The notes beneath the pieces were generated by a model. That model did no database searches and was not told the origin of the DNA. It saw only the letters and a program-made list of their open reading frames with translations. From Okamejei kenojei (Eukaryota), in the NCBI GenBank assembly GCA_035221665.1, contig CM069155.1, positions 29,388,001-29,452,000 of the forward strand: DNA of 64,000 bases. Direction: 5' to 3'. The position numbers and the translations under genes were made by a program. Position 1 is the stretch's first letter, and each line of letters opens with the position of its first letter. Positions 1 to 20,599 of this stretch are shown here, piece after piece.

Positions 1-32
1 GAGTTCCCCAGACCAGCTGCAGCATTCAGAAC
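1..32 (-). CDS. Possible next exon (GSECC...), putative start of the C-terminal Cys-containing domain, truncated by the window edge
   Basis: Strong acceptor TTTTCTGCTCTTCCAG ending at 33; phase-1 reading GSECCSWSGEL. Lies in a low-quality contig beyond a gap. Confidence 0.4.
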
Positions 33-612
33 CTGGAAGAGCAGAAAATTCATATGAAGTATATTATTAACCGCCGTTTTATTCTGTTCAGTTTAATGAG
101 CGTAAGGCGTGAGATTTACAGCTTCTATTAAGATCGTGGTGGAACCAAAATAATCTATCTCGTTCTATTCCATTTACAGTTCCCACTCAATACCAAAACT
201 CTCAAGGGACTTCTCTGATATTGCTCCAAAAAGGAGCAATATGGCTGTGATGATATCCTTGCCACACGTGATGGTTTCTTGCTTCCGACAACATTCAAGT
301 AGTCCGACCATTTTACAGGATTAAGTTTTTTATTTCAATGACATAATCCCATCCTTGTCTCTCCTTTGCTACAAGTGCAACAAGCCCACGGTCTTGTCGT
401 CTACAGAATGCAATTCTAATCGGTCCCTCTTACGTATAACCGGCAACAAAGTAGTCAACAAGGCATTCAAGAAACCAGGACACATAAATTCATAAGTTCA
501 TAAAAATTCATTGTCTATGAGCAGATTTATGCCTTCGGCCATCAAAGGCTACTCCGCCATTCTATTCGTGGGACCTATCTACCTTAACCTCCTAAACACC
601 ATTCTCATCTTA

Positions 613-1112
613 NNNNNNNNNNNNNNNNNNNNNNNNNNNNNNNNNNNNNNNNNNNNNNNNNNNNNNNNNNNNNNNNNNNNNNNNNNNNNNNNNNNNNNNN
701 NNNNNNNNNNNNNNNNNNNNNNNNNNNNNNNNNNNNNNNNNNNNNNNNNNNNNNNNNNNNNNNNNNNNNNNNNNNNNNNNNNNNNNNNNNNNNNNNNNNN
801 NNNNNNNNNNNNNNNNNNNNNNNNNNNNNNNNNNNNNNNNNNNNNNNNNNNNNNNNNNNNNNNNNNNNNNNNNNNNNNNNNNNNNNNNNNNNNNNNNNNN
901 NNNNNNNNNNNNNNNNNNNNNNNNNNNNNNNNNNNNNNNNNNNNNNNNNNNNNNNNNNNNNNNNNNNNNNNNNNNNNNNNNNNNNNNNNNNNNNNNNNNN
1001 NNNNNNNNNNNNNNNNNNNNNNNNNNNNNNNNNNNNNNNNNNNNNNNNNNNNNNNNNNNNNNNNNNNNNNNNNNNNNNNNNNNNNNNNNNNNNNNNNNNN
1101 NNNNNNNNNNNN
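613..1112. other. Assembly gap (500 N)
   Basis: N run. Confidence 1.
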
Positions 1113-1129
1113 GGCACTTCCATAGCCGG

Positions 1130-1420
1130 TAAATGTCACAAATGAATACAGCCCTTATCAGGTGCTGCTGGCACGGCCTCCCTCTAGCCGCACTTTCATA
1201 TTGAAGCAGCCCCCTGTCAGTGCTCTGGCGCAGCTGTCCCATAGACCGAACATTTACACATGAAGCAGCCCTGTCAGGCGCTGCCGCACGAGCCGTCCCC
1301 ATAGCCCAGCACATTTTACACATGAAGCAGCCCTGTCCCGGCGCGCCTGACCCCATAGCCCCACATTTGACACATGAAGCACCCTGTCAGGCGCGGCCTG
1401 TCCCATAGCCCCGCTATATT
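1130..1420. repeat. Minisatellite, ~57-60-bp unit (CACATGAAGCAGCCCTGTCAGGCGC...CCCATAGCCC)
   Basis: About 5 degenerate tandem copies are visible. Confidence 0.75.
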
Positions 1421-1749
1421 AGTGTGTAAGCTCACGTAAATCAACATTTAGTGTACAGCTTTACCTATGAACTATAAAAAAATTCATACACCCTTGCTTA
1501 AAACAATTATAACATTGTCAGAAACACATATAACAATAACTTTTTTACTTTGCCTTAGCTTTTACTTAAAGAAAACACATAAAATACATACTTGATTATA
1601 TGAGAAACCCTTTATAGCCCGACTCACGCCAAGTCCAATATAGGGGCTGAATGAGTCCCAGTAATTTCTGACGTGGGACCAACATCTGGTGACCACTGAC
1701 CCCACTGTCATGGCTCCAGCGTTTGCTTCCTGCCGTTCCAATGGCATCC

Positions 1750-2000
1750 CCACAGCTGGGAGCGCCTGACCCCCCCTGTCAGTGACTCTGCTTAAATTTC
1801 TTGCCGTTTTTACGGCAATCACGCAGGCTGGGAGCAGCTGACCCCCCCTGTCAAGCGACTTCTGCTTAAATTTCTTGCTGTTATTAGGCATTCCTGCAGG
1901 CTGGGACCGCTGACCCCCCTGTCACGCTCTGCTTAAATTTCTTGCCGTTAATATGCATTTCTCTGCAGCAGGGAGCCGCTGACTGCTCCTTATCTCTGCA
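1750..2000. repeat. Tandem repeat, ~70-bp unit (GCTGGGAGC...GACCCCCCTGTCA...TCTGCTTAAATTTCTTGC)
   Basis: 3-4 tandem copies; probably internal to an unclassified transposon. Confidence 0.75.
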
Positions 2001-3471
2001 AACGCCGATCATTTTTTGCCAGTTTATCCGCATTTTGCGGTCGACTGGAAATTTCCCCACAGTCCATGACCCGCAACTTTCAGCTGTGAAACGCAGGAAA
2101 AACCTCTGTAAAAAATGGCTCCTGCCTAAAAACACCCTGGAACATAAAAACCCAAACTTACCTTTTAAGTTTAAACTTACCACCGGCAGGAGCTCTGTCT
2201 GATCTGGACTGGTGATTGCGCATGCCTGTGACGTTCTGTGTGCGCTTGCGGCTGGGGTTGAGTTCGGTAATATTGTAAATTGTCTCTAGTGCGGGGGGGT
2301 GGTATGATAGTGTAGTGTACGGGGTGATCTCTGGTCGGCATGGACTCGGTGGGACCAAGGGCCTGTTTCCGATGCTGTTCTCTAAAGTTCTAAAGGTTAG
2401 CTAAAGTCTGTATTGTCCAAATATCATTCTTTTTAAGCTCATTTCTGTTGGAATGCAGACTGATCTTTAATTGTAGGCCTGCCATTTTACACTCGCACGC
2501 GCAATATTTCTAATAGAGGGCATTTAGGGAACAGACCATGAAGGTTCGCGCAGATGTTTACTTGTAGTGCAAGTCATCATGCTTGTGGCTCTACCTTGAA
2601 TGTCAAAGTGCGTATTCATTCCAAATAAGATGTCCTTTAGGTGGTTGGGCGTTGACGGGACATTGGTGTGTTGCTGCCATCATGTGGATTGTGGTTGGTT
2701 GAGTGATGCCACTGTGAAAGTGGGCAAGGCACTGTGTGAGGCCTGCTTTGTGGAGAATTGGATTGAGGGGGGTTTTTAAAGGTTTTTTTTTTTTTTTTTT
2801 TTTTCAAGGTCAGGGAGTCTGCCTATTTTATAATAGATTTTTCCTCCCTGTGGTTGAGAAAATTCTGGAATCCTATATCCTAGATGGGTGCGAGAGAAGG
2901 AAAGCACTACCTTGATTCAAGTTTGAAGTAAGCATTTTATTTCACTGCATGGGAGATTGAGGATTAGGGGAACAGGTAAGAAAGCAAGTGTTGTAGCAAA
3001 AGATCAGATCAACTGTTTTCTTTTACATTGTGACAATATCCAGTTGAAATTATTCTACTTGCCTATTTCTTATTTTCCCGTGTTCACTTTGCGACTCAGG
3101 AGATTTTACAACCCACCCAAATGAGTAGGCTCATTGGTTCTATACTCTCATCAAACTGACAGTGGTTGCAGGGCTCTTCAGGATTGCATGGAATATCAGC
3201 TTGGAATGTGGTGCTCAAGTGTCTGGAGTCTGATCCAAGCTTGGCAATGGATACTGCAAGAAGGAGAGAGTTTGTTTTATCATTTTTCAAGGGAGTTGGA
3301 CATTGTTGTTTAATTTCTGTATTGTCTCTGGTTTTTAAATGGGAGTTAAGAGTCAACCATATTGTGTTGGAGTCACTTAATAGGAGATGACTGAAAGATA
3401 CTGGAAGGGACTTTAAGTGAATTTCATTCTATGCCTAATTTCGATTAAATAAATGTTTACCGTTATCTTAC

Positions 3472-3531
3472 CCTTGAGCTCTAACATTGACATCAGGGTT
3501 GAGTTCAGTTCTTCCAGCTTTAGCATCTCGT
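3472..3531 (-). CDS. Neck exon (DEMLKLEELNSTLMSMLELK)
   Basis: Acceptor TTTATCAG, donor G|GTAAGA; 60 bp, phase 1-1; Leu heptads; sequon NST. The exact acceptor is uncertain because the frame stays open upstream (VANLS). Confidence 0.65.
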
Positions 3532-4590
3532 CTGATAAATTTGCCACAAATGCATTTTAAACACAAATACACAATTACATGTTTAATAAGGTGCAGACTT
3601 TTTAAAGTAATTGTTTTTTGAAATGTTACGTGTGGCAACCTTTTGTGAACAAAAATGGCTTTGTTGGGGAAGAGAAATCAGGTATAGTATAGAGTAGAGC
3701 AAATTCACCTACATTTATGATGGATGGCTGATGGATTACATTCTGGATGCCTCAGAAATTAATTTCCTATTTTTTCAGCAGGATTCTCATTATCTAAACA
3801 TTTTACTCCTACTCTCAAAATTCACCTGACCAAGCCTTTTGTCAGTTAATCAACATTCTTTATTTGTAGACAGAATAATCTTAACTGACCCCGTTTCATC
3901 TGAGACAATGCAACTTAAATGGCCAGCTTTCTCAGTCACTTAATACTTAGACCGTTCAGCAGCAATTTAACTAATTACTGATTGTTAATACTTACATGAC
4001 ATTTTATTTTCAACAAAGCAATGCCTATATCTCTTAACTAAATCTTTCTAAAATACAAATTGAGCTACAAATTATTTATTTCTAAAATACAACATTGATC
4101 AGCAGTAATATTTAATCATCATTAACTTGCATTGCACAGGGACTCCTTGAATTGTGAATGATCTGACATTAAAAAAAATCAACATTTCACACACACTCTA
4201 CTATATATATTTAAAACATTTTAAGCTGGTAATAAGAATAATAACATATTTCATGGTATTCATTAATGTCCATATGCAGTAAATGTAGGTTGATTAACGT
4301 TGGTTAACGTTGTGGCAATTATTCAATTGAATGAATTAATTATAGCAAATGTAGGTAGAGTGATATGATGTCATTAGTTGTTAAAAAATAATGTTTCTGA
4401 ATTACAGATAATTACAGAATTATGGCTTGTGGATAGTTCTCAGGAACAGAATGCTTATGTAACCCAGGGACTGCCTGTACTTGTATATTGCATATTTTAT
4501 TCTTAAATGGTTGAAATACTTTTCTGCATGAGAAATTTAAATGTTAACTGCCATCCCCAAATAGCTTTACTAATTAATTATCTTTCTTAC

Positions 4591-4688
4591 CAAGTGACTT
4601 CACTTGCTGGAGCTGCAAAGAAACGGAATCCTTGAATAACTGTATGGAATTTGAGTTCTGTTTCTTGGACTTTGAGAAAACTGCTTAT
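4591..4688 (-). CDS. Neck exon with apparent 1-bp frameshift (DKQFSQS / KKQNSNSIQLFKDSVSLQLQQVKSL)
   Basis: Strong acceptor TTTTCTCTTCCAG and donor G|GTAAGA, but 98 bp long; both ends read as neck-like peptide in different frames. An AG 8 nt downstream would give an open 90-bp exon. Confidence 0.6.
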
Positions 4689-4879
4689 CTGGAAGAGAAA
4701 ACACAAATATTCACAACACTTTAATTGGGCTGCATAAAATCGAGGCCAAATTAGTGCAAAGAAGTTGATCATTTTTTACAAAGTGGAGAGAGCGATTCTT
4801 TTGTGGCACAGGACATAACACAGTGACAGCAGTAATATTCACTCATTGTTCATGGGAGTGATTAAAACATTTTTATGGT

Positions 4880-5300
4880 GTCAAGTCAAGTCAAGAGAGT
4901 TTATTGTCATGTGTCCCAGACAGGACAATGCAATTCTTGCTTGCTGCAGTACAACAGAATATTTCCACCAATACGGACAGACTGTTGTCTGTGAATGAGG
5001 AAGTCGAGGATCCAATTGCAGATGCGCAGAGATCCATATCTGAGAGCTTGGTAACCAGCTTGGAGGAGATGATGGTATTAAATGCCGAGCTGTAGTCAAT
5101 GAACAACAGCCTGAAATATGAGTTTTTGTTGTCCAAGTGGTCCAGAGCGGAGTGGAGAGCCAGTGAGATCGCATCCACTGCTGATCTGTTGTCGTGGTAA
5201 GTGAACTGCAGTGGGTCCAGGTTTTTGTCGAGGTATGAGTTGATTTGCACCATGATCAGCCTCTCAAAGCACTTCATCACCACAGATGTTAGTGCCACTG
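4880..5300 (-). mobile_element. Rex1/Babar LINE RT fragment
   Basis: [13 protein letters not shown]...LDPLQF...[12 protein letters not shown] motifs; (CTTGA)n tail. Confidence 0.85.
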
Positions 5301-5579
5301 GTTGAATGCTGAAAGCAATTTCTCATATTGCCCCTTTTGAATGGACTCCAACTGGTTCACAGCAGGGCTGCCTTGCCTGAGTTCCTTGACTGTTGTCCCA
5401 AATAAAGAGAATAGATGACGTAACAAAGTTTAGAAGAAATAGAATTCTCATCCACAAAATGTTGCCTGTGATGCAAAAATAATCTGCTGGCAGTGTGATC
5501 TGGTAGAAATGTGATACACACTAACCATGTAGAATGTAAAAGCATTGAGACAGTGTGGGAAATATATCAGCTTGAGGTA

Positions 5580-8360
5580 TCTATATAATTAAAGCCTCAT
5601 CTTGACCACTTCCTGTCTTCGCTGTATATTGATTTTAGAAAAAATGCTACACTATATCACTATGATTTTTGGCCATCTTACTCACAGTGGTCCTCCGCTG
5701 TGGCAGCCCCAAGGATGTTTCCGATCGATAAAAATTAAAAAAAATAATGAATATTTAAAAAATCTTGAGATCAGCTGATTGGTCCTCTCGCCTGTCAATC
5801 ACCATGATGAAGGTAAAGTCCCTTCCAGGGGTGGGGGTGGGGGGCAAGGCTATAAAACCACAAATGCCTGGACGTGAGTCAGTCACTCTGGAAGATCGCG
5901 AGGGAGAGGCCACAATTGTGATTCTGCTGTGAGTCTACTGAACTGTGAGTCAACTGATCTGTGAGTCTACCCTTTATGTGCTCGATGTGGTTATGTGGTG
6001 ATGTGCTTTATGTGGTTATGTGCTTTGTGTGGTTAACCCTTAATGTGCTTGCAATAAATGATTTGTTAGCTAGCAATGTGCTTGAAGGGTCTCGACCTGA
6101 AACGTCGCCTATCTCCTTCGCTCCTTATATGCTGCTGCACCCGCTGAGTTTCTCCAGCCTTTTGTGTACCCTCGATTCTCCAGCATCTGCAGTTCCTTCT
6201 TTAACACAACTGCTTGCAATGAATGATGATTTTGTGGCGTCAACCTAAACACGGGCCGCTTATGGTCGAACCCTCGTCAGGAGATACGAGGGCGGGCACG
6301 TGACGTCATGGGCTAGAGGGAGTGTCCTGGTACTTAAGGAGTCTCACCTCGAGACCTTGGAGAGTCAACAGGTAGCTGAGCCCAAGAGTACAACCTCGCT
6401 CAGCTACAACAACATTGTAATATGGTTAGCGCACCAACTTTCCATGTCACCACTGAATAAACAACACTTTGAACCGGCCTGATGTCTCACTATTATTCAC
6501 CACGTATGGTGCCGCTACATTGGTGACCCCCGACTGTCCAAATTGAAATTTGGACTCAGATGAAGCACGCAGCCTCAGGAGACCTGATGTCTGCAGCCGG
6601 CTGCCCAGCCCTGAAGAACTACACTTCCGCCAACCAGGCCGTGCAGTAAGATATCTTCCCCGCCTCTTCCCCACCAGCTGCTGCTCACTGGAGCTGAGAA
6701 GCCACAGCTGCCACTGCTCTCCCGCTACCAGCAACGGGGCAGGCCCCGCTTCCAAACACCACACCGCTCCAGGCCTTGTGTGACGGGCGCCGAGCTCCCC
6801 TGCATGACCTGCCAGGAGCCGACCACCGGAGTGGAGAGGTTTTAGCAGCCGCCGCTGCCTCACCAGGTGCAGCAGGAGCTGCGAGAGTAGCAGCCTCCTG
6901 CCAACAGCAATGCCGACACACGCCCGACGGCCCTGGGAGCAGAGAAAGAGTACCAGCCGCTCTCCCGCTCCCGCTTCCGACAACGGACCCGGCCTCACAC
7001 CGCGAACATGGCTCCAGGCCCGGGCACTGCATCGGGCCTCAGTGCTCCAAGCCTGGCACTGCTACAGACTCGCCACGGCTCCGCGCCCTGCCCTGCACCC
7101 GCTGGCCACTGCCCAGGGCCTACCCACCCAATAGGGCGGGCTTTCCTGGGTCGCCTGCCGAAGACACGCTTCTGCTCCTCACCGGTCTTGAATCGCTGGT
7201 GAACGCCGCCTCAGCCAGCCGGCAAAATGGCCTCTAAGGCCTCCTCCAACAAGCGGCCAACCCAACTACATAAATGGCCGCCGCGGCCGGCCGGAAGAGA
7301 AGCTCGAACTTACCGTCCACAGCACCACCTTCCGGCTGGATGTCGTCCTTACAACCTGACCACCGACAACAGCGCCTCATTCAGGCCGGAGGCTGTCACT
7401 GCAACACAGCTTTCCTATCCTGCACGATGAACACTGGACAGTTTGAACTTTGGACACTGATTGCACTGTAATTTGTCTTTTTACTGTACATTTTTGTGTT
7501 CACTGCATTTCCACGCTCGGTTCAGAAATTAGTTTGCTTATTTTATTTAGTTTTTTTCCCCTCATCGTTGCTGGGGGCCGTATTTCACAGGACACTCTCC
7601 CTTAGCTGGTCAAGGAGATGCAACCGTGTCTCTTCCATCCGGCAGCTTCTGCATCGGTCTCCTCGCACCCCTTGGTACCTCGGGATCTCACACGCAGAGC
7701 GTCACTGCGCTCGTGGGGAGATCCGTCCCGACCCTCGCCAGGGGTGTCCCAGACCCCTTCCGTCCGGCGGCTTCTGCATCAGTCTCTTCGCACCCCTTGA
7801 TACCTCAGGATCGCCCACGCAGAGCGTCACTGCGCCCGTGGAGCCCTCCGTCCCAACCAACGCCCGGGGTGTCCCAGACCCACATGCAGGAGCCGCCCTT
7901 GAGCATGCTATTCCTTCCTCCCGTTCTGGGGGGGGAGGGCTGTGGGCGGGCACATGACGTCATGGGCTAGAGGGAGTGTCGTGGTACTTAAGGTCTCTCA
8001 CCTCGAGACCTTGGAGAGTCAACAGGTAGCCGAGCCGAGAGTACAACCTCCCTACAGCAACATTGTAATATGGTTAGCGCACCAACTTACCATGTCACCA
8101 CTGAGTAAACAACACTTTGAACCGGCCTGACGTCTCACCTTTATTCACCACATATGGTGCCGCTGCAATTTGTTAACCCTTAATGTGCTTGCAATAAATG
8201 ATTTGTTAGCCAGCAATGTGCTTGCAATGAATGGTGATTTGTGAAGCCTTATTGTGCTTGCAATAAATGATTTGTTAGCGCTTAATGAAATGAAATGAAT
8301 TGTTTGGCCTGCCCTGTGCTTTTGCTTTGCCTTTGCTTTGCATGACCCCACCTACTTTTA
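5580..8360 (+). mobile_element. 3'-truncated non-autonomous Helitron-like element hosting the LTR element and a PLE-derived insert
   Basis: A|TCTATATAATTAAAG...TCTTG start resembles the 5' end of the Helitron at 15176; an internal minisatellite (GTGCTTGCAATAAATGATTTGTTAG) continues on both sides of the LTR element; no CTAG end found. Confidence 0.5.
6233..8167 (+). mobile_element. Non-autonomous Gypsy-type LTR retroelement (~1.9 kb)
   Basis: TG...CA LTRs at 6233-6519 and 7941-8167 (3' LTR has a ~55-bp deletion); PBS TGGTGACCCC(C)GAC (tRNA-Trp type) at 6521; G-rich PPT before 7941; 4-bp TSD ATTT; no RT ORF. Confidence 0.88.
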
Positions 8361-8711
8361 AACAATGAGGCACGGCATTTTAACAGCTGATGGAATGGAA
8401 GCTAGGTACTCACAATCATCACAGACTCAACCTGAAGAACACATTCTCTCTTCTTGAGGGGTCAGTGTTACTCATACTGTCATCTTTGAATGCCAAGCCA
8501 CATTCTATACCAAAGTGAGCATACAAGGACCACCTCTCTGGTACAGTACTCACAGAAGAATTGGTGAGTTAAGACCTATCCATCAACAGTAATATGCCAA
8601 GGTTAGATGCCTGGTACAAAAATATCTGATTTGCAATTGAATTGACCTAACCCTGTTGAGTATATTGTTGGCAAGGTAAAAATCTCCTCCACTAAACTGT
8701 CATAGCACTAT

Positions 8712-9030
8712 TGGGTAGCACAGTGGCACAGCTTTAGCACACCCTTGCAGAGCCAGAGACCCGGGTTCAATTCTGACTTCAGGTACTGTCAGTGTGGGGT
8801 TTGCACTATGGTCTCCCCTTGGTGCGCTGGTTTTCTCCCACATCCCACAATTGCTTGGATTGGCCACAGTAAATTGCTCCTAATGTGGAGGTGAATGGTT
8901 GTTTTTGAGCGAGAATGGGAATATGGGGAAAATAAAAATGAATGTAAGGTGGTTAGTGTAAATTGTTGACGGAGTGCAGACTTGATGGGATGAAGTGCAG
9001 ACTTGATGGGCCTTAAGGCCTGTTTGTGTG
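8712..9030 (+). mobile_element. tRNA-derived SINE (HE1-like)
   Basis: A-box-like GTGGCACAG, B-box GGTTCAATTC, conserved core and LINE-like tail (GGCCTGTTT). Confidence 0.7.
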
Positions 9031-9521
9031 CTGGATAAACTAATACCGCACACAGCAAAGCAACAGGCTCTTCAGCCCATTATGATTATCAAATATCTGT
9101 ATACTTTAATTCAGTAGTAACCTCATTTTTTCCCTCAAATCCCCATCAACTCTCCATCTCCCAACCCACTCCCCCTCCCACACACCTACACTGCAGGAAA
9201 TTGTTGAACCAGCAAGCACATCTTTCGCAGGTGGGATGAAACCAGAACACCCAGATAAAGTCCACAAACTGGGGAATAGATGCAAATCTCTGCAGGCAAT
9301 ATCAGTGATCAGAATCTCTGATATTGCCTGATCTCTCGCTATGAGTCAGTAGGGCTAATTGTGCCCTTCAAATACAAGAACAGTTCTGTGTAACAACTTT
9401 CAGGCTGAATGATGAGCTATTTACGATAGAATTAGAGATCACATTCAGAACAGTCAATGTATAAATATTTGCTACACCTCGTTATTTTCTTATGATGTAA
9501 ATGGGTTTTTTTCTCTCTCAC

Positions 9522-9605
9522 CGGCTTCCTTCAGAGTCTGCACATTCAATCCGACCCGTGAGAGGGAATCTTGCATTGTTTGAATGTTGTCCAGAACTAT
9601 TACAG
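9522..9605 (-). CDS. Neck exon (AVIVLDNIQTMQDSLSRVGLNVQTLKEA)
   Basis: Acceptor CCTTTTTCAG, donor G|GTGAGA; 84 bp, phase 1-1; heptad pattern. Confidence 0.8.
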
Positions 9606-11381
9606 CTGAAAAAGGCATGTTTAAACAAAAATAAATGCATGGTACATCTTCAGTCACAGATAAACTTAGAATCAAATGAAGAGACGGTGTTGGAGTCAGT
9701 TTGTTAGAGTTATCCAATTAATTCCACTCAGCAGTTCTTCATCCAAAACTCATTTTTTTCTCCTCTCACATATTTACAACAATCTCTATTGGGGTATTAG
9801 TACTGAATCGGCTTCCTCTATCTCCTGTACCAAAATGTTTTATGGCATAATGCTTCTTCGGCTCCCTGAGCGCTGCTTTCCTAGGAACTTCTACCATTGG
9901 GAATGTGTTGGACTAGAAATTCTTACTTTTAACAAATAATGGTTTAATGTAACATCTGGACTTACTGTTTGCTGCAATGTGCGCTGGAGGAAGACTTCCT
10001 TCTGCACTCAGGTAAGTGTAAGTGTGCACTTGAGGCTCACACACCCCCTACAATTGGTCTGAAGAAGTGTCCCGACCTGAAATGTCACCTACCCATTTTC
10101 CCCGGAGATGTTGCCTGACCTGCTGCGTTCCTCCATAATTTTTTGTCTATGTTTAGTATAAACCAGTATCTGCAGTTCCTTTTTATTGCATTTTGATTCT
10201 GATTTACTTGGGTATGATCTCGTAAAACTCTGTGATATCTAGTTAAGTGTTCTAATGCATGATTTTTCTATAACATTATATCACATTCTTTTTAAATATG
10301 AAAGCTTTGACTATTATTTGTAGCTTATCATCATATTATGTTAAAATTTATCATGAAACCAGGTTGCATGTGTTGTATTTCTACAATTGCTAAATAATGT
10401 TTTATTATGAATAGAATGAAATAAAATAGTACAGCACAGAAACAGGCCCCTTCGCACACATTGTCCACCCCTTTAGCAGGTTAAGCCAAGCTTCTCTGCC
10501 ATCACGTGATCCATATCCCTCTATTCCTGGCATATCCATGTGTCAGGAAAGGAGGGATACGGGTCACATTTTGGGTTGTTTCAGGTTGTGGCCCTTCCTC
10601 GTTGTCCATTTCCTCCAAAAAATCACGGATCCACTGAAATCCTCCAGGACTTTACATTAGGCTCAAGATTCGGTGTGGAAGATTGCACCCTTCACGTTGT
10701 CCGCCCTGTTTCGACTAATGCAATCAACTCGACATGCACAAACAGAAGATCAAATGGAACAAGTTGTCCTACAACTTTAGGCTGTGCACGCCACACGAAA
10801 GAAGAAGAAGGCTCGAGATTCCAGTTCCTGCAGTTCCTTAGGATCTCCATGTTCTGATTGTATTTGTTCTGACCAAAATGTGCAATGAGTACAATTGGCA
10901 AGCACTGTGTCAATTCTAGTTTAGGAAGGGATAGTTCATCTTGAAATTAAAGTATAAAACACATGCTTTTGTGTCAGAGGTGTTCCACATGTCTTCAAAT
11001 CTCAGGAAGTTTCTACACCATTCCAAAGAAATGATTGTGCTTTTGTTATTGTTCAATGCTTATTTAAAAAAAATAATTTAATACAAATAAAACGTATGTG
11101 GGAGTTGAAGGACATGATGCAATTACAAAGGCAATTTACATTTTTATTTGACAATGTATCTGCCAGAATGACTGTGCATCAAAACTTTCCAATGACCATT
11201 TTTCTGGCAGATGCACGATTATATGCATTCCTTCCAAGATAAAGTAAGGGTGTTTTCTTCATGTGTAAATGTGAAAAAATGCATAGATTCATTTCATTGT
11301 CACAATTGTGCCATTGGAATAATTTTTGAAGCAGTTTGAATTTTTTTCTTAAGTTATTTCATAAAAAATGGAATCTCCTAC

Positions 11382-11477
11382 CTTTTTGTTCCATTCTTTG
11401 AAATTTGGATAGAAGTGAAGAATTAACATTATTTAGAGACACAGTAATCACGTTTAGGTTCTCTGATATCTGGATAC
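11382..11477 (-). CDS. Neck exon (GIQISENLNVITVSLNNVNSSLLSKFQRMEQK)
   Basis: Strong acceptor TTTTTCTTTACTGTCCAG, donor G|GTAGGA; 96 bp, phase 1-1; N-glycosylation sequon NSS. Confidence 0.8.
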
Positions 11478-12346
11478 CTGGACAGTAAAGAAAAATCACA
11501 AAATGGACACTGTTGGTCAATTGGATGGAATCTGCCATGAGGCCAGATATACCCCAGCAATTAACCCTTTGTCTCTCCCGTGTAAAATGATCAGGTTTTG
11601 ATTGGACCATTACTATAAATCCTACTTTATAATATTGCTAGGAATCTAGCTCATCTCTGGGTGTGACTGAACTGAAGTCCTCTTGTTTGGCCTCTCATCT
11701 TCCATCTCCAACATAAACTTGATTCTAGAAAGGGATCCTGATCCGAAATGTCCTCTTTCCATTCCCTCTACAAATGCTGCCCGAACCGTTGTTATTGGGC
11801 ACTTTGTCTGTCACATGAACTTGGGCTCTACTGAAACTTTACCATCTGTATTCTCATTGAAATGAAGTGCCATATATCCATTTCTACATTTTATTCCCCA
11901 TTCAACACTGCTCCATTCTGAAAATTGTCATCTTTTTATGTTGCTTAACCCCTGCCCACTTCAGAAAGTGGAAGCTGGGAGGCCACATACTGGTTTTTAT
12001 TTGTGGAGAGAGTTAGCAGCTTCAACGTCATGGGCATTGCCATCTCAGATAACCTGTCCTGGGCCCAGCACATAGATATTATTATGAAGAAGACATGCCA
12101 GCATATCTACATTTTTGGCCACTAAAACCCAGATGGATTTAACAGCATGGCATATTTAGGTCTTTAACAAAAATGGTAAAAATGCAATTGGAGCCAATGA
12201 TTTACAGTGGTTTACACCCTGAAGCAATCACTGAAAGGGGGTTCGTGCAGAAGCCCAGCAGGGCATCACCTATTTCTCAACTACCAATGGTTTGCATTCA
12301 GAGAAGGACATTATTTCTTAAAGGCATATTCCCTGTGGGAGCCGAA

Positions 12347-12790
12347 TGATAAGATTATAAGATCTCAGTGATAGGAGCAAAATTAGGCCATTTGGTTCAT
12401 CAAGTCTACTGTGCCATTCAATTATGGTTGGGTTGATCTATCTCTCCCTCCTAACCCTGTTCTCCTGCCTTCTCCTCATAACCTCTGACACCCAAGAATC
12501 TATCAATCTCTGCCTTAAATATATCTACTGACTTGGCTCCATAGATTCACCACCCTCTAACTAAATAAATTCCTCCTCGTATCATTCCTAAAAGAACGTC
12601 TTTTAATTCTGAGGCTATGACCTCTAGTCCTAGACTCTCCCACTCATGGAAACATCCTTTCCACATCCACTCTATCCAAGCCTTTCACTATTCTGTATAT
12701 TTCATTGAGGTTCCCCCTCATTCTTCTAAACTCTAGCGAGTAGAGGCCCAGTGCCATGAAATGCTCATCGTACCTTAACCTACTCATTAG
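12347..12790 (-). mobile_element. CR1 LINE 3' fragment
   Basis: Reverse complement of the CR1 ORF2 C-terminus and 3' UTR. Confidence 0.75.
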
Positions 12791-13007
12791 AAAAAATTCT
12801 ACAGCGGAGTGTGATTCAACTCCTATAATTACTTAGCAAAAATGCATGTCTTTGTCAACACAAGATCAATACAAGAAGGAAGGTCCTCTGTTTCAGTATG
12901 GGTATGTGTAGGGTTAGGGGTAGATGGTGAGATGGCAGAGAGCCATTGGAATAAGAAAGACTTGCCAGGACATGGCAATAATTTTTATTATTGATTCTAG
13001 TCTTTAC

Positions 13008-13085
13008 CTTTCAGTTGTTGCAGTTCAGAACTCAAGCGTTTGTCAGCCTCCTTTAACTGATTAACAGCCTCTGAAATCCGAATAT
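13008..13085 (-). CDS. Neck exon (DIRISEAVNQLKEADKRLSSELQQLK)
   Basis: Acceptor TCTTTTCAAG, donor G|GTAAAG; 78 bp, phase 1-1; clear heptad (coiled-coil) pattern. Confidence 0.8.
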
Positions 13086-14141
13086 CTTGAAAAGATCATC
13101 ATTGTTGATTTCAAAATTAGGATTCTTACAATTCAACCAGAGTAGATTAGTGAAAAACTATCCATTCACTTAATAATTGCAGCCAAATGACAGATTACAT
13201 CTAGTGTTTGAATTTGCATTGCAGTTTCATTTGTATGCATTGAAATCTTCAGACTGACCTGTCAGATCTTTGCAAAATTGGTCTCAAATGGCAAAGTGGG
13301 GAAGCTGTTGGCAAGATATGTTTAACACCAGGCTCCAAGTTGGGAGTGCAAAATGGTGGTCAATGGTCTGCAAAATCGATTTCAAATCCAGGAAACACTC
13401 AATCAATTATTCTTACAATGCAAATGAGCCAAATTTCGGCAGTCACCAAAAGAAATCGCCAAATTGAATAGGCCCTTTAGGTCTGAAAAAAAAAACTCTT
13501 TCATTTTGCATAGAGATTGCCTACTGCTATATGTTTCCAGCATGTAATGTTTTTATTTCAGTATTTTGGCAATTGCAGTTTTTTGATTCACCACTGCTAA
13601 TATTCTTGAAGTAATTGAAGATATGTTGGTCTGAGACAAGGCCTGAGAAACTCCAGCAGTGTTATCTTGGGATTGGGTTGATGATTTCCAACGTCCGCAA
13701 CATTTAAAAAAAAATCCACAGTTTTACCCAGTCCGTGAGATTTCTCATTCTTGGTTCTTGGTCCTCCAAAATATTCCAACTGGAATTTAAACTGGAGGTG
13801 GTGAAGGGAGGGGTTCCTATTAGTCTACTCTATATTCAAACACTACTCAGTCAAACACTGCACTTAAGATGAAGACATTCTCAATCCAGCTTTGGAATTT
13901 AGCACATTTTCCATGGAGTCAAGTGGGCTGTGGCCAAACACAAAATGAGCATTAATGAACAGGTCAGTGGTGAATGTGCAGTGGGAATGGGTTTTATGTG
14001 ATGCCGTCATGCACGACACATTTAATCACTTTATTAATGATTGTATCCTTTGCGAGGCACTACTTATAATTTTATTGAATGAAGAAGTAATTCCTTTTGT
14101 TACAAGCCCAGTGTGGCAACACAGGGCTTTTTAGTTTAAGA

Positions 14142-15176
14142 CTAGACCAAGTGCAGACCCGTTGGGTCTGCTCCCCAAATGCAAGATTCCACATCTCACT
14201 CGTTCCCCCGACGCAAGTCGTTCCCCTAATGCAATACTCCACCACTCATGCATAGCCCCCAATTGCGCAGGCGCGGCTCATTCCTCCTCATCCCCCAGCA
14301 CTCCATCCTCCTCCTCTTTTTCACCCTCCCCTCTTCAATCCCCAGAGAGGGAGGGGGGTGGAGAGGGAGAGGGGTAGAGAGGGAGGGGTAGATAGGGAGG
14401 GGGCATCTCACTCCTCCATCCCTCCCCATCTCCCTCCTCCACACACCCCCCCCTCCCTCTACCACCCCATTCTCCACCCCATCTCCCTCTTCCTCATTTC
14501 CCTCATCCTCCTCCCCTCACTCCCATTCCCTGCCCCAGGACCTACCCAGGTCGTAGAGCAGCAGCAGGTCCTGGAACTCGGCCTGGTTCTCGTACTCAGC
14601 CCAGCCCCGGCTGTAGACACCAGCTGCCAGCTCAGCCACTGCTTGGGCTATAGTGCAGGCTACGACTTCATTTCCGGGCTCGTCCCTGACCATGGACCCC
14701 AGCTCATCCTTGGTTCCAGTGGCGGCATCTTTTTTGGCCCCGGTCAAGGCCCCATCCCAAGCCCCGGGCTCGGCGCTCTCTCCAGCTCCAGCTCCAGCAC
14801 CACCCTCCCCACCAAAGATCCGACTGGGCGTCAGGCGCTTGCAGCCGTCGCCACGTGAACACTGGAGTGCCCCACCCTCCTGCCTTGTGAGTGCATTGTG
14901 ATGTCACTCGTGTTTTTTTCCGAAATAGGTGAGTTTTCGGACTGTTTTTAAAACTTCAAATTATTAAAAAGTTTGGAAATATAGGTGGGAATGCAACCAG
15001 AAAATGCTTATCGCCTCGACGGGAAAAATGTGAATGGAATGTGCGAAAATGGGAAGGCTGTGGCCCTGTGTTTGGAAGAAAATAGGAAAATTAACCAGAT
15101 TCTCACTCACACACACACACAGCCACAGCCACACACACAGCCACAAACAAGACGAAGAATTTTAGTATTATGTAGA
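14142..15176 (-). mobile_element. Non-autonomous Helitron (~1035 bp) with GC-rich cargo
   Basis: Minus strand: A|TCTACATAATACTAAAA 5' end; 3' hairpin GCAGACCC-AAC-GGGTCTGC followed by CTAG|T; inserted between A and T with no TSD. Confidence 0.85.
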
Positions 15177-15653
15177 TTAGGAAAAGAGTGCCACCTGGTG
15201 GATTCTTGGAAGTTTCGCATGCTGTGAAGACTTGCAAAGCCAATCAACGTAAGGTTTATTGAGGCACATTTAAGTCTGTAAATACGGGCCAAGAACAGTA
15301 ACAGAGTGAGCAGCATACATTTGGCCGCGGATTCAGCACCCATTCCAGTGCCACCAGAAAACCAAATGTTACCTTTTGAATACTTTAGACAAAATGCAAT
15401 GCACTTTTAATCTATCAATTCCATTAGAAAGATTGAATTTACAGAAATCACGTTCCGCATGGGGAGGTTTTCCCCAACCCTGTGTTAAAAATCAGGCTGA
15501 TTACTTCATTTCTGCAAGTCAATTCCCCATCCACTCAGACAAAATATTTAACAATTTGTAGTTTTATTCCTTGAAAAAAATATTTCTCCAGGTTCCACAG
15601 TCTAGATACTCATACTATTAACATCCCACTCTTGACATCACCTTTGGTGAATC

Positions 15654-15850
15654 CGAGACACAAGGAACTGTAGATGCTGGAAACTTGAGTAACACAGAGT
15701 GCTGGAGTAAATCAGTGCGTCGGGCAGCATCACTGGAGGACATGGATAGACGACATTTCGGGTCCGACCCCAAACGTCGCCAATCTAGGGCCCCCAGGGA
15801 TGCTGCCTGACCCGCGGAGTTACTCCAGCACTTTGAGTTTTACTTTTAGT
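15654..15850. mobile_element. Inverted pair of Penelope-like terminal-repeat fragments
   Basis: Minus and plus copies of the GAAACGTC...GATGCTGCCTGACCCGC..GAGTTACTCCAGCA motif joined at ~15760. Confidence 0.7.
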
Positions 15851-16097
15851 AAATACAGATTAGTGCCCAAAACAGACCAGACACCTAATTTTGTCCCAAT
15901 TACCTGTGACCTTATGACCTTATATCTAGTCAAACAAGCAAACGCTCCATGTATCCGTACCTCTCCTGATTGTAATGTGCTTTAGTTTCATTGACACTGA
16001 TGAGAATACATTTTAGAAAGAAGGAAAACATATGGAATAGCGAAGAGCCAGGAACGAAAGATACATTTATTGTTCCTTGTGGTAGCTACTCACTTAC

Positions 16098-16178
16098 CAT
16101 TTCCTTGGCGTGTGGTTAGTCCATTGGCGCTTTTAAATGAATCTTGAAGTTCTTTAACATCAACAGAAATCTTCATAT
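16098..16178 (-). CDS. Neck exon (YMKISVDVKELQDSFKSANGLTTRQGN)
   Basis: Acceptor TTTTCAATATGTAG, donor G|GTAAGT; 81 bp, phase 1-1, open. Confidence 0.78.
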
Positions 16179-17989
16179 CTACATATTGAAAAGTGTGTTA
16201 TATTTCAGAAACAAAACCTGCTTACAATCAGAAGTAATTAACTGGTCAGCTTTACCATTGAACGAATACAGAATGCGCAACATAGCAATTTGACAGTTCT
16301 CTGAGTGCATCCCACGAATCTGCAGCCGGTTATTATAATGAAAGCACGCAGTTTTACTGTCAGAAGAAGACTGTGGAGATGGATTTTTCCATCGAAATAA
16401 ATGGACTGGTGAGGCATTTGAAATGTCCTCTTTGCCTTCATAATAATGAAGCTGAAATTAACAGGCTTAGCCCGAACCCGTGACGGGCTAATAATAGAAT
16501 TATTTTGAAGACGGGGTTTTCTATTCTATTGACGGTTGATACAAAGGCTGGGCCGGTAGGCGTGACAGAATTCGTAAAGTGTTAAATGGAATGTGTTCTT
16601 CTTGGGTTCAATGTGGCAAAGTTCCAGCTGATGCCAAGAACAGCCACACAGGAGCCGTCATGCCCGTCCCTTCGGTCCACCAACCAACCGCTCGTTCGTA
16701 AGCACCGGCCGAGCGCTGGTGAGACGGGTATTATCGCCACCGCAGCTCCGTAAACGACGGTTTGAAAAATATCATAGCTGGCCAGAACGATCCCGAGTTA
16801 TTCTTTCACCTTGATGATATGTTATCACATGTGAAACGTTAATTCTCCACGGATGCTGCCCTGATTGGTGAGATGTCCAGCATTTTCTGCCTCTGTTCCT
16901 TGAGGTTGAATAGTGAACAAATTTACACAATGATTGCATTTAGATAGTTAAATTAAAGTGTCCACTTTCTGGTGGATGTTTATATTCGAAACAAGAGGGA
17001 AGTAGATGAAACGATTGATGTTTCAAGAAGCGGTTGGTGTTTGCTAAGTCGCAAGTATCAACTGGTACCTTTTTATTACGGGTCACACCTGAAGCTGGAT
17101 AATGGATTCTGCACAATTCATGGTATCAGGTAATGAATTAATAGATTGAATGATACAGCATGGAAACAGCCTCTTCGGCCCACCTAGCCCATGCCAATCA
17201 TCGATTACCCGTACACACAAGGTCTGTGTTATAACACTTTCTCATCCATTCCCTACCCACTAGGGGCAATTTACAGAACCCAAATGAGCGTACAATGCAG
17301 GCTGTGCAAAGAAACCGAAGCACCCAGTGTAAACCAACGCGGTTACAAGGATAACGTGCAATGTCCACATTGACAGCATCCAAGGTTATTTTGAACAAGG
17401 ATCTCTGACGTTGCGAGGCAGCAGCTCTTCCAGCTGTACAAAATATGGCAAACAAAATGGATTTTGTATTGTCCTTGATAGTGCACGTAAAATGCATAGA
17501 ACGCATCGCAGCGTTCACAAAAGCGGCTGAATTCACATTCGGGCGCAATATTCATGCGCTCGGTGAAAGCTTGCGTTAAGGAGGCGCCGATGGTTCATGA
17601 AAATTCTCGCGTTTGCCTCTGGCAAATCGATGTAATATTAAACTGCTAGCCCGTGTGTAAGGGATCGTCAGAGGCGCCGTTTGGACTGCAATGCCAATTA
17701 TGAGATGATTGGAGCAGATTGGAAAAAGCCAACATGCATGAACGTTGAAAGCCAGGGTCACCTTGAGTGAAACTAGTAACGTCTTTGCCCCGCGTCTAGT
17801 GTCACATTGACAGACACATGTAACGCCCTTGGTCTGTTGGTGCAGCTTGATTCTATCACCAGTTCTAGTGTATTAGTCCTCGCTGATGTAATATAATTGC
17901 TCCCCAAAAAACCGCGCTGAAAGCCATTCCCAACCCCACCTATTTCCCTCTCTCAGTAGAGGTGGTGGGGTGACTCAGTTGGCAAAGAA

Positions 17990-18800
17990 AAACATCAAAT
18001 CCTTAGCAAAAAAAAAAATGACACAGGATCAGAAGATGTAGAATGCCTGTGGGTAGGGTTAAGAAACTGCATGGGTAAAAAGACACTGATGGGAATTATA
18101 TCCAGGCTTCCGAATAGTAGTCACGACAAAATACGTCAGGATGTAGTAAATACATGGAAGAAGGCAATGTTACGGTGGTCATGGGGGATATCAATATGCA
18201 GGTAGAATGGGAAAGTCAGGTTCCCATTCTACCTGCATCCCAAGTCTAGATTCCAAGAGAAGGAATTTGTAGAATTGCTATGAGATGGCTTTTTAGAGCA
18301 GCTCCTGGTCGAGCCCTCCAGGGAAAAGACAATTCTGGATTTGGAGTTGTATAATGAAACAGATTTGATTAGGGATCTTAAAGTGAAGGAACCCCTAGGA
18401 GCAAGTGATCATAATTTGATAAAAATAAAACTTGTAGTTTGAGAAGGAGAAGGCAAAATCGGATGTATTGAGTAAAGGTAACTACAGAGGCATGAGAGAG
18501 GAGCTGGCTATAGTTGATTGGAAGGGGACCATCGCAGGAATGACGGTGGAGCAGCAATGGCAGGTGTTTCCGGGAACAATTCTGAAGACGTTGGATCTTT
18601 TTCATCCCAAAGAGGAATGCACATACCAAGGGGAGAATAAGACCACCATAGCTAAGAAAGGAAGTCAAAGACAGCAGAAAAGCAAAAGTGAAGGCATATA
18701 ATACAATAATGATTAGCGGGCAGCTAGAGGATTAGGTAGCCTTTAAAAACCAACAGAAGGCAACTAAAAAAGCAATAAGCAGCGAAAAGATGAAATATGA
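17990..18800 (+). mobile_element. CR1 endonuclease-region fragment
   Basis: Degenerate similarity to the APE domain of the CR1 copies elsewhere in the window. Confidence 0.75.
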
Positions 18801-18935
18801 GAAAACCCACGCGGTTCACGGGGAGAACGTACAAACTCCGTACAGACAGCCTCCGTAGTCGGGATCGAACCCGGCTCTCTGGCGCTGCAAGCGCTGTAAG
18901 GCAGGAACTCCACCGCTGCGCCACTGTGCCGCCCT
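18801..18935 (-). mobile_element. tRNA-derived SINE head (HE1-like)
   Basis: Minus strand GGGCGGCACAGTGGCGCAGCGG...GGTTCGATCCC (A and B boxes). Confidence 0.8.
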
Positions 18936-19758
18936 GATCTGACATAGCGGACTCGACGGGACGAATGGCCCAATTCTACTCCAATGCCATGGTCTACTAG
19001 AAGTCCTCTCTGAAATGTTCAGGTCAGAGTAATCACCTTATTGAAAAGGCTGGCCATGAAAGCCTCTACGCTACATGATTTTTTTCAGCAGCGCTGGACT
19101 ATGTGAGCAGCAGCTAATAATTTCCGTAGAAGTTCTCAAGCGGAGAACTGATTGAATCCACTGGAGAACGTAATGTTCCCCAAATATCCCAAACCAACAC
19201 TGTTGCAGTGCAGTATTTACTACCACATGGAAAGAGCAGAGCGTACAATTACAGACGCACAGTTTAAGAGTGGGATACCGATATCTTTGATCGCCCCGCC
19301 CATTCAAATTCTAAAGCGATTTGTCAATATTCGCTTTAAATGATCTGTATAGACAAGCTGAGCGCGTTTTCTCGTATTAGAGAGCGTGAGAGTGATTTAT
19401 CTGACAGAGAGCCTATTGCTTCCTATGTCACACCTCCCGAGAACAGAAACATTACCCATTGGAACGTGGTGAGCAGACAATTTAGATGGGTTAAATATAC
19501 CGCAGAATTCACAAACAGTGGTGGAATTTGTGCTTGGCAGAAGGTAGACTGGTAGCAAGTTATGCAGAAATATGGATAGACAATAGTTCGATGGGGTGGG
19601 GGTGTCGCCAAGCGGAAAGTGTGGTATCGGGCGCCGATTAGGGTAGGCTCTGTTGGCATCGATTAATTATTGGCGGGGCGTATAACTGATCGCACGCACC
19701 ATGCTGCCTGTTATAAATCGCAGAGGGACATGTATTCTGCCAGAAGAACAATACTTAC

Positions 19759-19872
19759 ATGCAACAATGGACAATGCTGTGAGTACTCCCAGGCCAATCA
19801 GACACAACGTGACAGTGACCTTCACAATTATTTCCCCTTGCCTCGGTTTCATCAATCGAGTCCATTCTGAGC
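19759..19872 (-). CDS. Type II membrane receptor, exon 2 (TM: GSEWTRLMKPRQGEIIVKVTVTLCLIGLGVLTALSIVA)
   Basis: Acceptor ATACATTCAG, donor T|GTAAGT; 114 bp, phase 1-1; ~22-residue hydrophobic stretch with basic residues on its N-terminal side. Confidence 0.8.
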
Positions 19873-19955
19873 CTGAATGTATATTGAAATTAATTGAAAT
19901 TAAGCAGTACATAATTTCATACTGCAAGTGTCTACACAATTGACATAATAATTAC

Positions 19956-20037
19956 CGGTCTTGAATAATACCGAGTTTTCGTTGTCACAAATGCATAAAT
20001 TCTGCAAGGCGTCGTTAGAAGGATTTTCGAGGGCCAT
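19956..20037 (-). CDS. Type II membrane receptor, exon 1 (cytoplasmic: MALENPSNDALQNLCICDNENSVLFKT)
   Basis: ATG at 20037, ~55 bp downstream of TATAA; 27 codons +1; phase-1 donor G|GTAATT; an 83-bp intron joins it in frame to the TM exon. Confidence 0.65.
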
Positions 20038-20091
20038 TCGATCTGATTGACTGGCGTGTACGAATACGAGTGCAACAGCTGAACCTTCCCG

Positions 20092-20117
20092 TTATAAGTG
20101 AAGTGAAAAGTTCCTCT
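20092..20117 (-). promoter_or_regulatory. Promoter of the type II receptor gene: Ets/PU.1 + IRF-like + TATA
   Basis: Minus strand reads AGAGGAAC-TTTTCACTTCACT-TATAA immediately upstream of exon 1. Confidence 0.45.

Positions 20118-20512: not shown

Positions 20513-20516
<4 letters not shown>

Positions 20517-20596: not shown

Positions 20597-20599
<3 letters not shown>

What the first reader, a model, noticed from the sequence alone, without database searches (positions are those of the whole stretch)
1..20117. Hidden multi-exon type II membrane receptor with a modular coiled-coil neck (probable C-type-lectin-like receptor)
Seen: eight small minus-strand exons (19956-20037, 19759-19872, 16098-16178, 13008-13085, 11382-11477, 9522-9605, 4591-4688, 3472-3531), all with phase-1 GT/AG junctions. 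They splice into tail + TM + ~165 aa of heptad-rich neck with N-glycosylation sequons C-terminal to the TM. One exon (4591-4688) needs a frameshift fix. The ORF track shows only scattered pieces. Known: a tail exon, a TM exon and phase-1 neck exons followed by a Cys-initiated domain is the layout of group II/V C-type lectins (CD209, CD23, ASGR, CLEC4F, CD72). Inference: the exon starting GSECC at position 32 begins the lectin domain; a scavenger-type or other head domain is not excluded.
Basis: partly seen in the sequence, partly recalled or inferred. Interest (0 to 1): 0.85.

Follow-up and report, generated by a model that had tools for sequence, protein, structure and literature searches.

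The report
Skate hepatic-lectin-like receptor gene
The eight small minus-strand exons are real and encode the tail, membrane anchor and coiled-coil stalk of an ordinary galactose-type C-type lectin receptor already annotated in three other skates; its sugar-binding head lies outside the window, and one exon of this copy carries two extra bases that break the frame.

Summary
Observation confirmed. All eight exons sit at the stated coordinates with AG/GT borders and phase-1 junctions.

A search with the TM exon alone found XP_032899422.1, "hepatic lectin-like" of Amblyraja radiata. Its relatives are CLEC10A-like of Leucoraja erinacea and LOC144605762 of Rhinoraja longicauda. These proteins map colinearly onto all eight exons at 77-89% identity, and they match every split codon down to exon 7. 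They end in a Pfam Lectin_C domain with QPD and WND motifs.

So the family call holds, through orthologs only. No lectin-domain exon lies in the window. The "GSECC" piece at 1-32 is not supported: orthologs continue D-RNHCPEHF, and 26 equally good acceptor sites lie nearby.

Exon 7 is frameshifted relative to all three orthologs by single extra A's at 4671 and 4661. This could be assembly error, a disabling mutation, or rescue through in-frame acceptors at 4683/4680; I could not tell which.

No RNA run was available; the runs that hold the stretch are DNA of a relative about 95% alike. The assembly gap lies after exon 8, and no coding frame of the model crosses it.

The scan noted the same stretch again (s1-880171) and a similar gene 108 kb before the window (s1-880544).

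Verdict: ordinary and already known.

The parts
19956..20037 (-). Exon 1: ATG and 27 codons of the cytoplasmic tail (MALENPSND...), with a GT donor.
   Evidence: tblastn identity of 83-90% to skate orthologs, E about 1e-24 together with exon 2.
19759..19872 (-). Exon 2: the rest of the tail plus the single transmembrane signal-anchor (phase 1-1, 114 nt).
   Evidence: Kyte-Doolittle maximum of 2.39. phmmer of this exon alone found XP_032899422.1 at 86% identity, E 1.4e-11. This exon is skipped in R. longicauda isoform X3.
16098..16178 (-). Exon 3: membrane-proximal spacer and first neck unit (81 nt, phase 1-1).
   Evidence: 82-88% identity to orthologs. DNA contigs of a relative change A17V and T21S, which are the residues of the orthologous proteins.
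13008..13085 (-). Exon 4: short neck unit (78 nt, phase 1-1).
   Evidence: 89% identity to R. longicauda isoforms X1 and X3 only. It is absent from the annotated A. radiata and L. erinacea isoforms.
11382..11477 (-). Exon 5: long neck unit carrying the NSS sequon (96 nt, phase 1-1).
   Evidence: 84% identity to orthologs. It is absent from A. radiata isoform X2.
9522..9605 (-). Exon 6: neck unit (84 nt, phase 1-1) with the strongest heptad pattern.
   Evidence: The tblastn hits overrun the exon and give 77-80%; over the exon's own 27 codons 25-26 agree.
4591..4688 (-). Exon 7: neck unit of 98 nt instead of the 96 nt of the orthologs. Single extra A's sit at 4671 and 4661. In-frame alternative AG acceptors would start the exon at 4683 or 4680.
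   Evidence: With the acceptor at 4688, which the orthologs' reading D-KQFSQ implies, the frame breaks and a stop follows inside the exon.
3472..3531 (-). The orthologs' exon would span 3472-3546, but TG, not AG, precedes 3546 here.
   Evidence: tblastn 69-79%.
613..1112 (.). Assembly gap downstream of exon 8, within the intron or further downstream. No coding frame of the model crosses it. It could hide an exon.
   Evidence: The right flank (1202-1412) is a 52-62 bp tandem repeat.
1..32 (-). It is not supported as part of the gene.
   Evidence: No likeness to the orthologs' next exon. Twenty-six comparable sites lie nearby.

Best explanation
Window 3472-20037 (minus strand) holds the 5' two-thirds of a skate gene for a group II (asialoglycoprotein-receptor / macrophage-galactose-lectin type) C-type lectin receptor. 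It is the ortholog of the genes NCBI calls 'hepatic lectin-like' (Amblyraja radiata), 'C-type lectin domain family 10 member A-like' (Leucoraja erinacea) and LOC144605762 (Rhinoraja longicauda).

Shown:
- Exon 1 encodes a short cytoplasmic tail.
- Exon 2 encodes the signal-anchor.
- Exons 3-8 encode a Pro- and Cys-free heptad neck.
- All junctions are phase 1, so neck exons can be gained, lost or skipped without breaking the frame. Species and isoforms do differ in which neck exons they hold.

Inferred from orthologs and known relatives:
- The neck forms a parallel trimeric coiled coil.
- It holds up three C-terminal Ca2+-dependent carbohydrate-recognition domains with a QPD/WND (galactose/GalNAc-type) site.
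- This gives avid binding of terminal Gal/GalNAc glycans at the cell surface.

The head-domain exons lie beyond the left end of the window or in the gap.

In this assembly exon 7 carries two extra single bases, and exon 8 lacks the orthologs' acceptor. This copy is therefore mis-assembled at those points, recently disabled, or spliced differently. My rough odds are 45 : 35 : 20.
For: - Exon borders and phases.
- TM, sequons and Pro/Cys-free neck.
- Enrichment of heptad-type exons in this chain.
- phmmer of exon 2 alone against 1.84 billion representatives gives XP_032899422.1 (E 1.4e-11, 86%).
- Pfam Lectin_C at 234-337, E 5e-23.
- Family hits with PF00059 in three skates and several sharks.
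- Colinear tblastn hits of the orthologs to all eight exons, with agreeing split codons.
- The nearest solved domains are CLEC10A, SRCL, langerin and ASGR1 (E 1e-21 to 1e-26).
- The window's copy has no excess of private residue changes (6, against 4, 6 and 11 in 183 columns).
- DNA contigs of a relative are colinear through introns and exons at about 95% identity, so the locus is conserved.
- A model of three copies of L. erinacea residues 125-371 gave ipSAE 0.66, against a best control of 0.00. The tool's calibration counts are 21 of 30 solved homo-pairs and 0 of 23 single chains reaching the mark. The runs agree in at least 80% of contacts and the partner pLDDT is at least 83. Contacts are spaced 3-4 residues apart from 128 to 238.
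Against: - No RNA evidence for this species. The only holders are DNA runs.
- The lectin domain of this copy was not seen.
- Exon 7 is frameshifted and the orthologs' exon 8 acceptor is missing, so the copy may not make a receptor at all.
- Residue identity of about 89-91% at about 95% DNA identity is close to what neutral change would give. The tail and neck therefore show no clear purifying selection.
- The trimer model may pass from memory of solved langerin or MGL trimers. It was also made on the L. erinacea protein, not on this copy.
- The orthologs are automatic predictions, not studied proteins.
Confidence: 0.9

Rival explanations
1. The copy in this genome is a recently disabled gene (a unitary or duplicate pseudogene). 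The two single-base insertions in exon 7 are real. With the ancestral acceptor at 4688 they give a stop inside exon 7. The ancestral acceptor of exon 8 is also lost.
For: - All three orthologs read through two frame changes in the window's exon 7.
- TG stands in place of AG before 3546.
- A. radiata holds a second, near-identical copy with a broken lectin domain (XP_032898928.1).
- The scan noted a second such gene 108 kb away in this genome, so spare copies exist.
- Loss of a lectin by a splice-acceptor mutation is known for human CLEC4F (PMC6422238).
Against: - There is no excess of private substitutions.
- Exons 1-6 are all open with intact splice sites.
- In-frame acceptors exist for both exon 7 and exon 8.
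- Indels are common between the window and the relative's contigs, so assembly indel errors cannot be excluded.
Confidence: 0.35
2. The gene is intact and the two extra A's are assembly errors. The true exon 7 is 96 nt, as in the orthologs.
For: - Apart from the two extra bases, the exon encodes the orthologs' sequence almost residue for residue.
- Both extra bases lengthen short A runs.
- The scaffold carries estimated-length gaps.
- Many 1-nt differences in length separate the window from the relative's contigs (table 4).
Against: - Two errors within 11 bases, and none in the other 535 coding bases.
- The missing exon 8 acceptor would be a third coincidence.
- The runs are only 2-3 A's long, which is not a typical error site.
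Confidence: 0.45
3. The insertions are real but are compensated by splicing. Use of the AG that starts the exon at 4683 or 4680 keeps the whole model open (239-240 codons to the window's edge). Use of the acceptor at 3531 shortens exon 8 by 5 codons.
For: With either acceptor the spliced model has no stop. The resulting residues keep the heptad-like character.
Against: The AG that starts the exon at 4688 follows the pyrimidine tract directly. It is the one the orthologs use (D-KQFSQ), so it should win most splicing events. An in-frame AG nearby has about a one-in-three chance of occurring by accident.
Confidence: 0.2
4. The exon chain is a chance pattern, or the head domain in this species is of another kind (for example a scavenger-type SRCR or collagenous domain).
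For: The head domain is unseen in the window.
Against: Eight colinear hits to annotated lectins of three species. No Gly-X-Y run in any exon. GSECC is no better than 26 nearby chance sites.
Confidence: 0.04

Closest known systems
Predicted skate proteins: XP_032899421.1 / XP_032899422.1 (hepatic lectin-like X1/X2, Amblyraja radiata), XP_055511135.1 (CLEC10A-like X1, Leucoraja erinacea), XP_078277412.1-14.1 (LOC144605762 X1-X3, Rhinoraja longicauda)
   Same: They share the window's tail, TM and neck exons in the same order. Identity is 89-91% over 183 aligned residues, and the split codons are the same down to exon 7.
   Different: - None is identical, so the window is from another skate.
- Neck exon content differs. 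The window has exons 4 and 5. A. radiata and L. erinacea have another long unit (LQLGD...) plus exon 5. R. longicauda has exon 4, four further units and exon 5.
- The window's exon 7 has two extra bases.
- The window's exon 8 lacks their acceptor.
- Their lectin domain is not in the window.
Mammalian macrophage galactose lectin (CLEC10A/MGL) and asialoglycoprotein receptor (ASGR1/2, 'hepatic lectins')
   Same: Type II topology and a heptad neck that trimerises (PMC3671775). The C-terminal Ca2+-dependent domain of the skate orthologs matches the solved CLEC10A (6py1, E 2.7e-26) and ASGR1 (E about 1e-21) domains. The QPD...WND motif is present in the orthologs.
   Different: The window's tail has no tyrosine, so the YxxØ-type uptake signal of ASGR1/MGL (my own knowledge) is not seen. 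The neck is split over six small exons. Sugar binding is untested.
CD23 (FCER2)
   Same: Its neck is made of repeated heptad units, each encoded by its own small exon, with unit number differing between species (my own knowledge, not checked here).
   Different: The CD23 units are 21 residues. Here there are two unit kinds of about 25 and about 31 residues. The CD23 head is a weaker match (E about 1e-17).
CLEC4F (Kupffer cell receptor) and langerin
   Same: Both are trimeric coiled-coil-neck lectins, galactose-type in the case of CLEC4F. Tail, TM and neck lie in separate exons and the domain in three exons. Human CLEC4F was lost through a splice-acceptor mutation (PMC6422238).
   Different: There the whole neck is one exon. 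Here it is six.

Membership tests
Group II C-type lectin receptors (ASGR / CLEC10A / CLEC4 / CD23 type) | Type II topology: N-terminal cytoplasmic tail and a single signal-anchor, with no signal peptide. | tested here: met
   One hydrophobic segment at about aa 39-65 (Kyte-Doolittle 2.39). R/K/R/K lie on its N-terminal side, and the sequons lie only C-terminal to it.
Group II C-type lectin receptors (ASGR / CLEC10A / CLEC4 / CD23 type) | Extracellular alpha-helical heptad neck that oligomerises. | tested here: met
   Heptad pattern with no Pro or Cys over about 164 residues. The trimer model of the L. erinacea ortholog gave 0.66 against a best control of 0.00; calibration 21 of 30 solved homo-pairs and 0 of 23 single chains reached the mark; runs agree in at least 80% of contacts, partner pLDDT at least 83. 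This is in silico only.
Group II C-type lectin receptors (ASGR / CLEC10A / CLEC4 / CD23 type) | C-terminal C-type lectin-like domain (Pfam PF00059). | tested here: inconclusive
   Not present in the window: tblastn of orthologs gave no hit, and an HMM of 13 domains against all open pieces gave a best E of 2.1. It is present in every ortholog. The exons must lie left of position 1 or in the gap.
Group II C-type lectin receptors (ASGR / CLEC10A / CLEC4 / CD23 type) | Ca2+/sugar site motifs (QPD or EPN, plus WND). | not testable with these tools
   Seen only in the orthologs (GQPDN ... LWNDN). This copy's domain is outside the window.
Group II C-type lectin receptors (ASGR / CLEC10A / CLEC4 / CD23 type) | Gene layout: separate tail, TM and neck exons, with the domain in three exons. 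| tested here: inconclusive
   The first part is met.
Orthology with the skate 'hepatic lectin-like' genes | Colinear exon-by-exon likeness on one strand, with a conserved locus. | tested here: met
   The relative's DNA contigs are colinear through the introns at about 95% identity.
Class A scavenger receptors (collagenous / SRCR head) | Gly-X-Y collagenous run after the coiled coil. | tested here: not met
   No such run in exons 1-8, which hold only 10 Gly residues, all scattered. The orthologs go straight from the neck to Lectin_C.

The most novel reading that the evidence does not exclude
In this skate the receptor gene has taken two real frameshifting insertions and lost an acceptor, yet stays open through shifted acceptors (4683/4680 and 3531). 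This would be a live example of splice-site compensation. Alongside it, the number of symmetric neck exons differs between skate species (2 versus 6 middle units), tuning how far the lectin head stands from the membrane. The gene also sits next to germline-joined Ig light-chain clusters.
Probability: 0.15. Interest if true: 0.35.

Novelty: already known. Interest (0 to 1): 0.15.

Why it matters
The main value is for annotation. The scattered small ORFs in 3.4-20 kb belong to one ordinary lectin receptor gene whose orthologs NCBI has already predicted in three skates.

Three minor points may interest a comparative immunologist:
- The neck is built from two kinds of symmetric exons whose number differs between species and isoforms.
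- This copy has frame-breaking differences that need resequencing.
- The gene lies beside an Ig light-chain cluster.

None of this opens a long-standing question.

Tried and rejected
- **RNA evidence.** The look-up of sequencing runs found no RNA holder. The two holders, laid on 15400-20300, proved to be DNA contigs of a relative about 95% alike that cover introns as well. The other two runs held only repeats. Splicing in this species is therefore untested, and both caps are spent.
The orthologs' genomic DNA, and so their exon 7 and exon 8 borders, could not be read.
- **Joined spliced model.** Searches were made exon by exon, by reference. The join was computed only inside scripts, for frame, hydropathy and heptad counts.
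- **Pfam on the single exons** gave nothing, as expected for 25-37 residues.
- **My first idea about exon 7.** I thought it needed no fix because in-frame acceptors exist at 4683/4680. I revised this once the orthologs showed that the ancestral reading uses 4688 and that two bases are extra.
- **Paralogous exons elsewhere in the window.** tblastn found none.
- **Separate copies of the R. longicauda extra neck units.** None was found; they match only exons 4 and 5 themselves, at about chance level for two of the four.
- **P0002** (a bacterial repeat protein, E 8e-7 to the TM exon) is a composition match and was ignored.
Full report
**What is in the sequence.** Apart from exon 1, which starts at the ATG, each is preceded by AG, and all eight are followed by GT. 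The lengths are 82, 114, 81, 78, 96, 84, 98 and 60 nt, so every junction falls after the first base of a codon.

Joined inside a script only, they give the following:
- a 40-residue tail;
- one hydrophobic segment (best 19-residue Kyte-Doolittle mean 2.39, about residues 39-65) with Arg/Lys on its N-terminal side;
- about 164 residues without Pro or Cys that carry a hydrophobic 3-4 pattern;
- two sequons (NSS in exon 5, NST in exon 8).

The chain is not a chance pattern. Among about 2,970 candidate symmetric phase-1 exons on both strands of the whole window, seven pass a filter for splice signals, heptad pattern and absence of Pro. Five of these (four distinct exons) belong to the chain.

The TM exon alone (window:19760-19870:-) was scored against 1.84 billion representative proteins. 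It found one meaningful hit at 86% identity over all 37 residues, E 1.4e-11, at the same offset from the N-terminus. That protein is XP_032899422.1, "hepatic lectin-like isoform X2" of the thorny skate Amblyraja radiata. It carries Pfam Lectin_C at 234-337 (E 5e-23).

A search with it brought these relatives, all with PF00059:
- XP_055511135.1, CLEC10A-like of Leucoraja erinacea;
- three isoforms of LOC144605762 of Rhinoraja longicauda;
- the A. radiata isoform X1;
- weaker shark and bony-fish relatives named CD209-like, ASGR-like and CLEC10A-like.

Laid on the window by tblastn, the skate proteins hit exons 1, 2, 3, 5, 6, 7 and 8 in order on the minus strand at 69-90% identity. Exon 4 is hit at 89% by R. 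longicauda isoforms X1 and X3. The residues at the six split codons down to exon 7 (G, Y, D, G, A, D) are those of the orthologs, which confirms the exon borders that far.

DNA contigs of a relative (runs X1 and X2) lie colinearly over 15400-20300 at about 95% identity, introns included. Their two differences in exon 3 produce the very residues (V and S) that the orthologous proteins have. The window therefore holds the orthologous locus of a fourth skate.

**The head domain.** The orthologs go from exon 8 into D-RNHCPEHF... and a typical long-form C-type lectin domain with WIGL, QPD and WND motifs. Its nearest solved relatives are CLEC10A, SRCL, langerin and ASGR1.

None of it is in the window. 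tblastn gives no hit, and an HMM built from 13 of the retrieved domains scores nothing better than E 2.1 on any open piece of either strand.

Twenty-six other sites in the 3.4 kb after exon 8 have as good an acceptor context and ten open phase-1 codons. I therefore treat it as unsupported.

The head exons must lie to the left of the window or in the gap at 613-1112. The gap sits after exon 8, so no coding frame of the model crosses it. Its right flank is a 52-62 bp tandem repeat. I could not test continuity across it.

**The defects of this copy.** All three orthologs read exon 7 as D-KQFSQ-VQE-QNSNSIQ.... In the window these three pieces lie in frames 2, 0 and 1, at 4686-4672, 4670-4662 and 4660-4592. 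One extra A therefore sits at 4671 and another at 4661, and the exon is 98 nt instead of 96.

With the acceptor that the orthologs' reading implies (exon start at 4688), the frame breaks and a stop follows within the exon. Two further AGs, which would start the exon at 4683 or 4680, would keep the whole model open for 239-240 codons.

The orthologs' exon 8 starts fifteen bases earlier (V-ANLS...). There the window has TG, not AG.

The window's copy has no more private residue changes than the others: 6, against 4, 6 and 11 in 183 columns. If it is disabled, that happened recently.

I cannot decide between assembly error, a real lesion and rescue by shifted acceptors without reads of this species.

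**How it most likely works.**

*Shown:* the gene layout, the topology signals and the heptad neck.

*Inferred:* the neck forms a parallel three-stranded coiled coil, as in the macrophage galactose lectin (PMC3671775) and in CLEC4F and langerin (PMC6422238).

A model of three copies of L. erinacea residues 125-371 supports the inferred trimer:
- The score was 0.66 in all three runs, against 0.00 for the best of three controls.
- The mark was reached by 21 of 30 solved homo-pairs and 0 of 23 single chains in the tool's calibration.
- The runs agree in at least 80% of contacts, and the partner pLDDT is at least 83.
- Contacts are spaced 3-4 residues apart from 128 to 238, across the exon junctions.
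- The pass may come from memory of solved relatives, and it concerns the ortholog, not this copy.

The QPD/WND site of the orthologs predicts Ca2+-dependent binding of galactose or GalNAc (rule from my own knowledge of C-type lectins; not tested). The tail has no tyrosine, so I infer no uptake or signalling motif.

**The modular neck.** The middle of the neck is built from two unit kinds: a short one like exon 4 and a long one like exon 5, which carries an N-x-S sequon. Content differs as follows:
- the window has one of each;
- A. radiata and L. erinacea have two long units;
- R. longicauda has six units;
- annotated isoforms drop exon 4, exon 5 or the TM exon.

All these exons are symmetric in phase 1, which allows such changes. 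This agrees with the scan's own note on duplicated neck exons (s1-880171).

**Comparison and novelty.** This is a standard group II C-type lectin receptor gene, and its direct orthologs are already in NCBI's annotation of three skates. What differs from the mammalian relatives is only the split of the neck over six small exons, which recalls CD23 (my own knowledge). The family call for this copy rests on orthology, because its own head domain is outside the window. I rate it already known and of low interest.

**Limits.**
- No RNA run of this species was on offer.

Noticed in passing
window 42653-42967 (+): An open frame of 104 codons reads as a germline-joined Ig light-chain V-J (...DAADYYC AKWDSGLY FGKGTRL...), as the scan's notes s1-880119 and s1-880155 say. 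The lectin gene therefore lies about 22 kb from an Ig light-chain cluster, on the opposite strand.
   Followed up: partly
window 4894-5298 (-): Reverse-transcriptase fragment (Pfam RVT_1, E 7e-8) of a LINE, lying in the intron between exons 6 and 7 on the same strand as the gene.
   Followed up: partly
window 15564-15891, 17040-17531, 18024-19007: Very high-copy repeats in introns 2 and 3. Summed contig depth reaches 1e5-4e6 in all four runs laid, including the two small runs that hold nothing else of the stretch. These are interspersed elements shared between species.
   Followed up: no
window 6300-6482 and 7942-8130 (+), around the GC-rich stretch 6447-7970: Two near-identical open pieces (MTSWARGSV..LETLESQQVAEP...) flank a GC-rich block in the intron between exons 6 and 7. 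They look like the direct terminal repeats of an inserted element.
   Followed up: no
window 23010, 33829, 36778, 37370, 45473, 54405 (both strands): A recurring short element whose translation reads EW(R/C)C(R/W)L.GPNGLLLHL... turned up as chance hits to the TM exon. It is probably a SINE-like repeat family.
   Followed up: no
window 20450-20597: A long (CA)n microsatellite about 400 bp upstream of the gene's start codon.
   Followed up: no
P0019 = XP_032898928.1 (Amblyraja radiata LOC116987161): A second A. radiata gene on the same scaffold is identical to the hepatic lectin-like protein over the first 243 residues except for one. It then reads through the exon 8 donor and keeps only a fragment of the lectin domain. 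It is a recent duplicate that is broken or mis-assembled. The scan also notes a second such gene 108 kb before this window (s1-880544).
   Followed up: partly
window 1202-1412 and 1755-1983: Tandem repeats of 52-72 bp directly right of the assembly gap at 613-1112. They are a likely reason for the gap.
   Followed up: no
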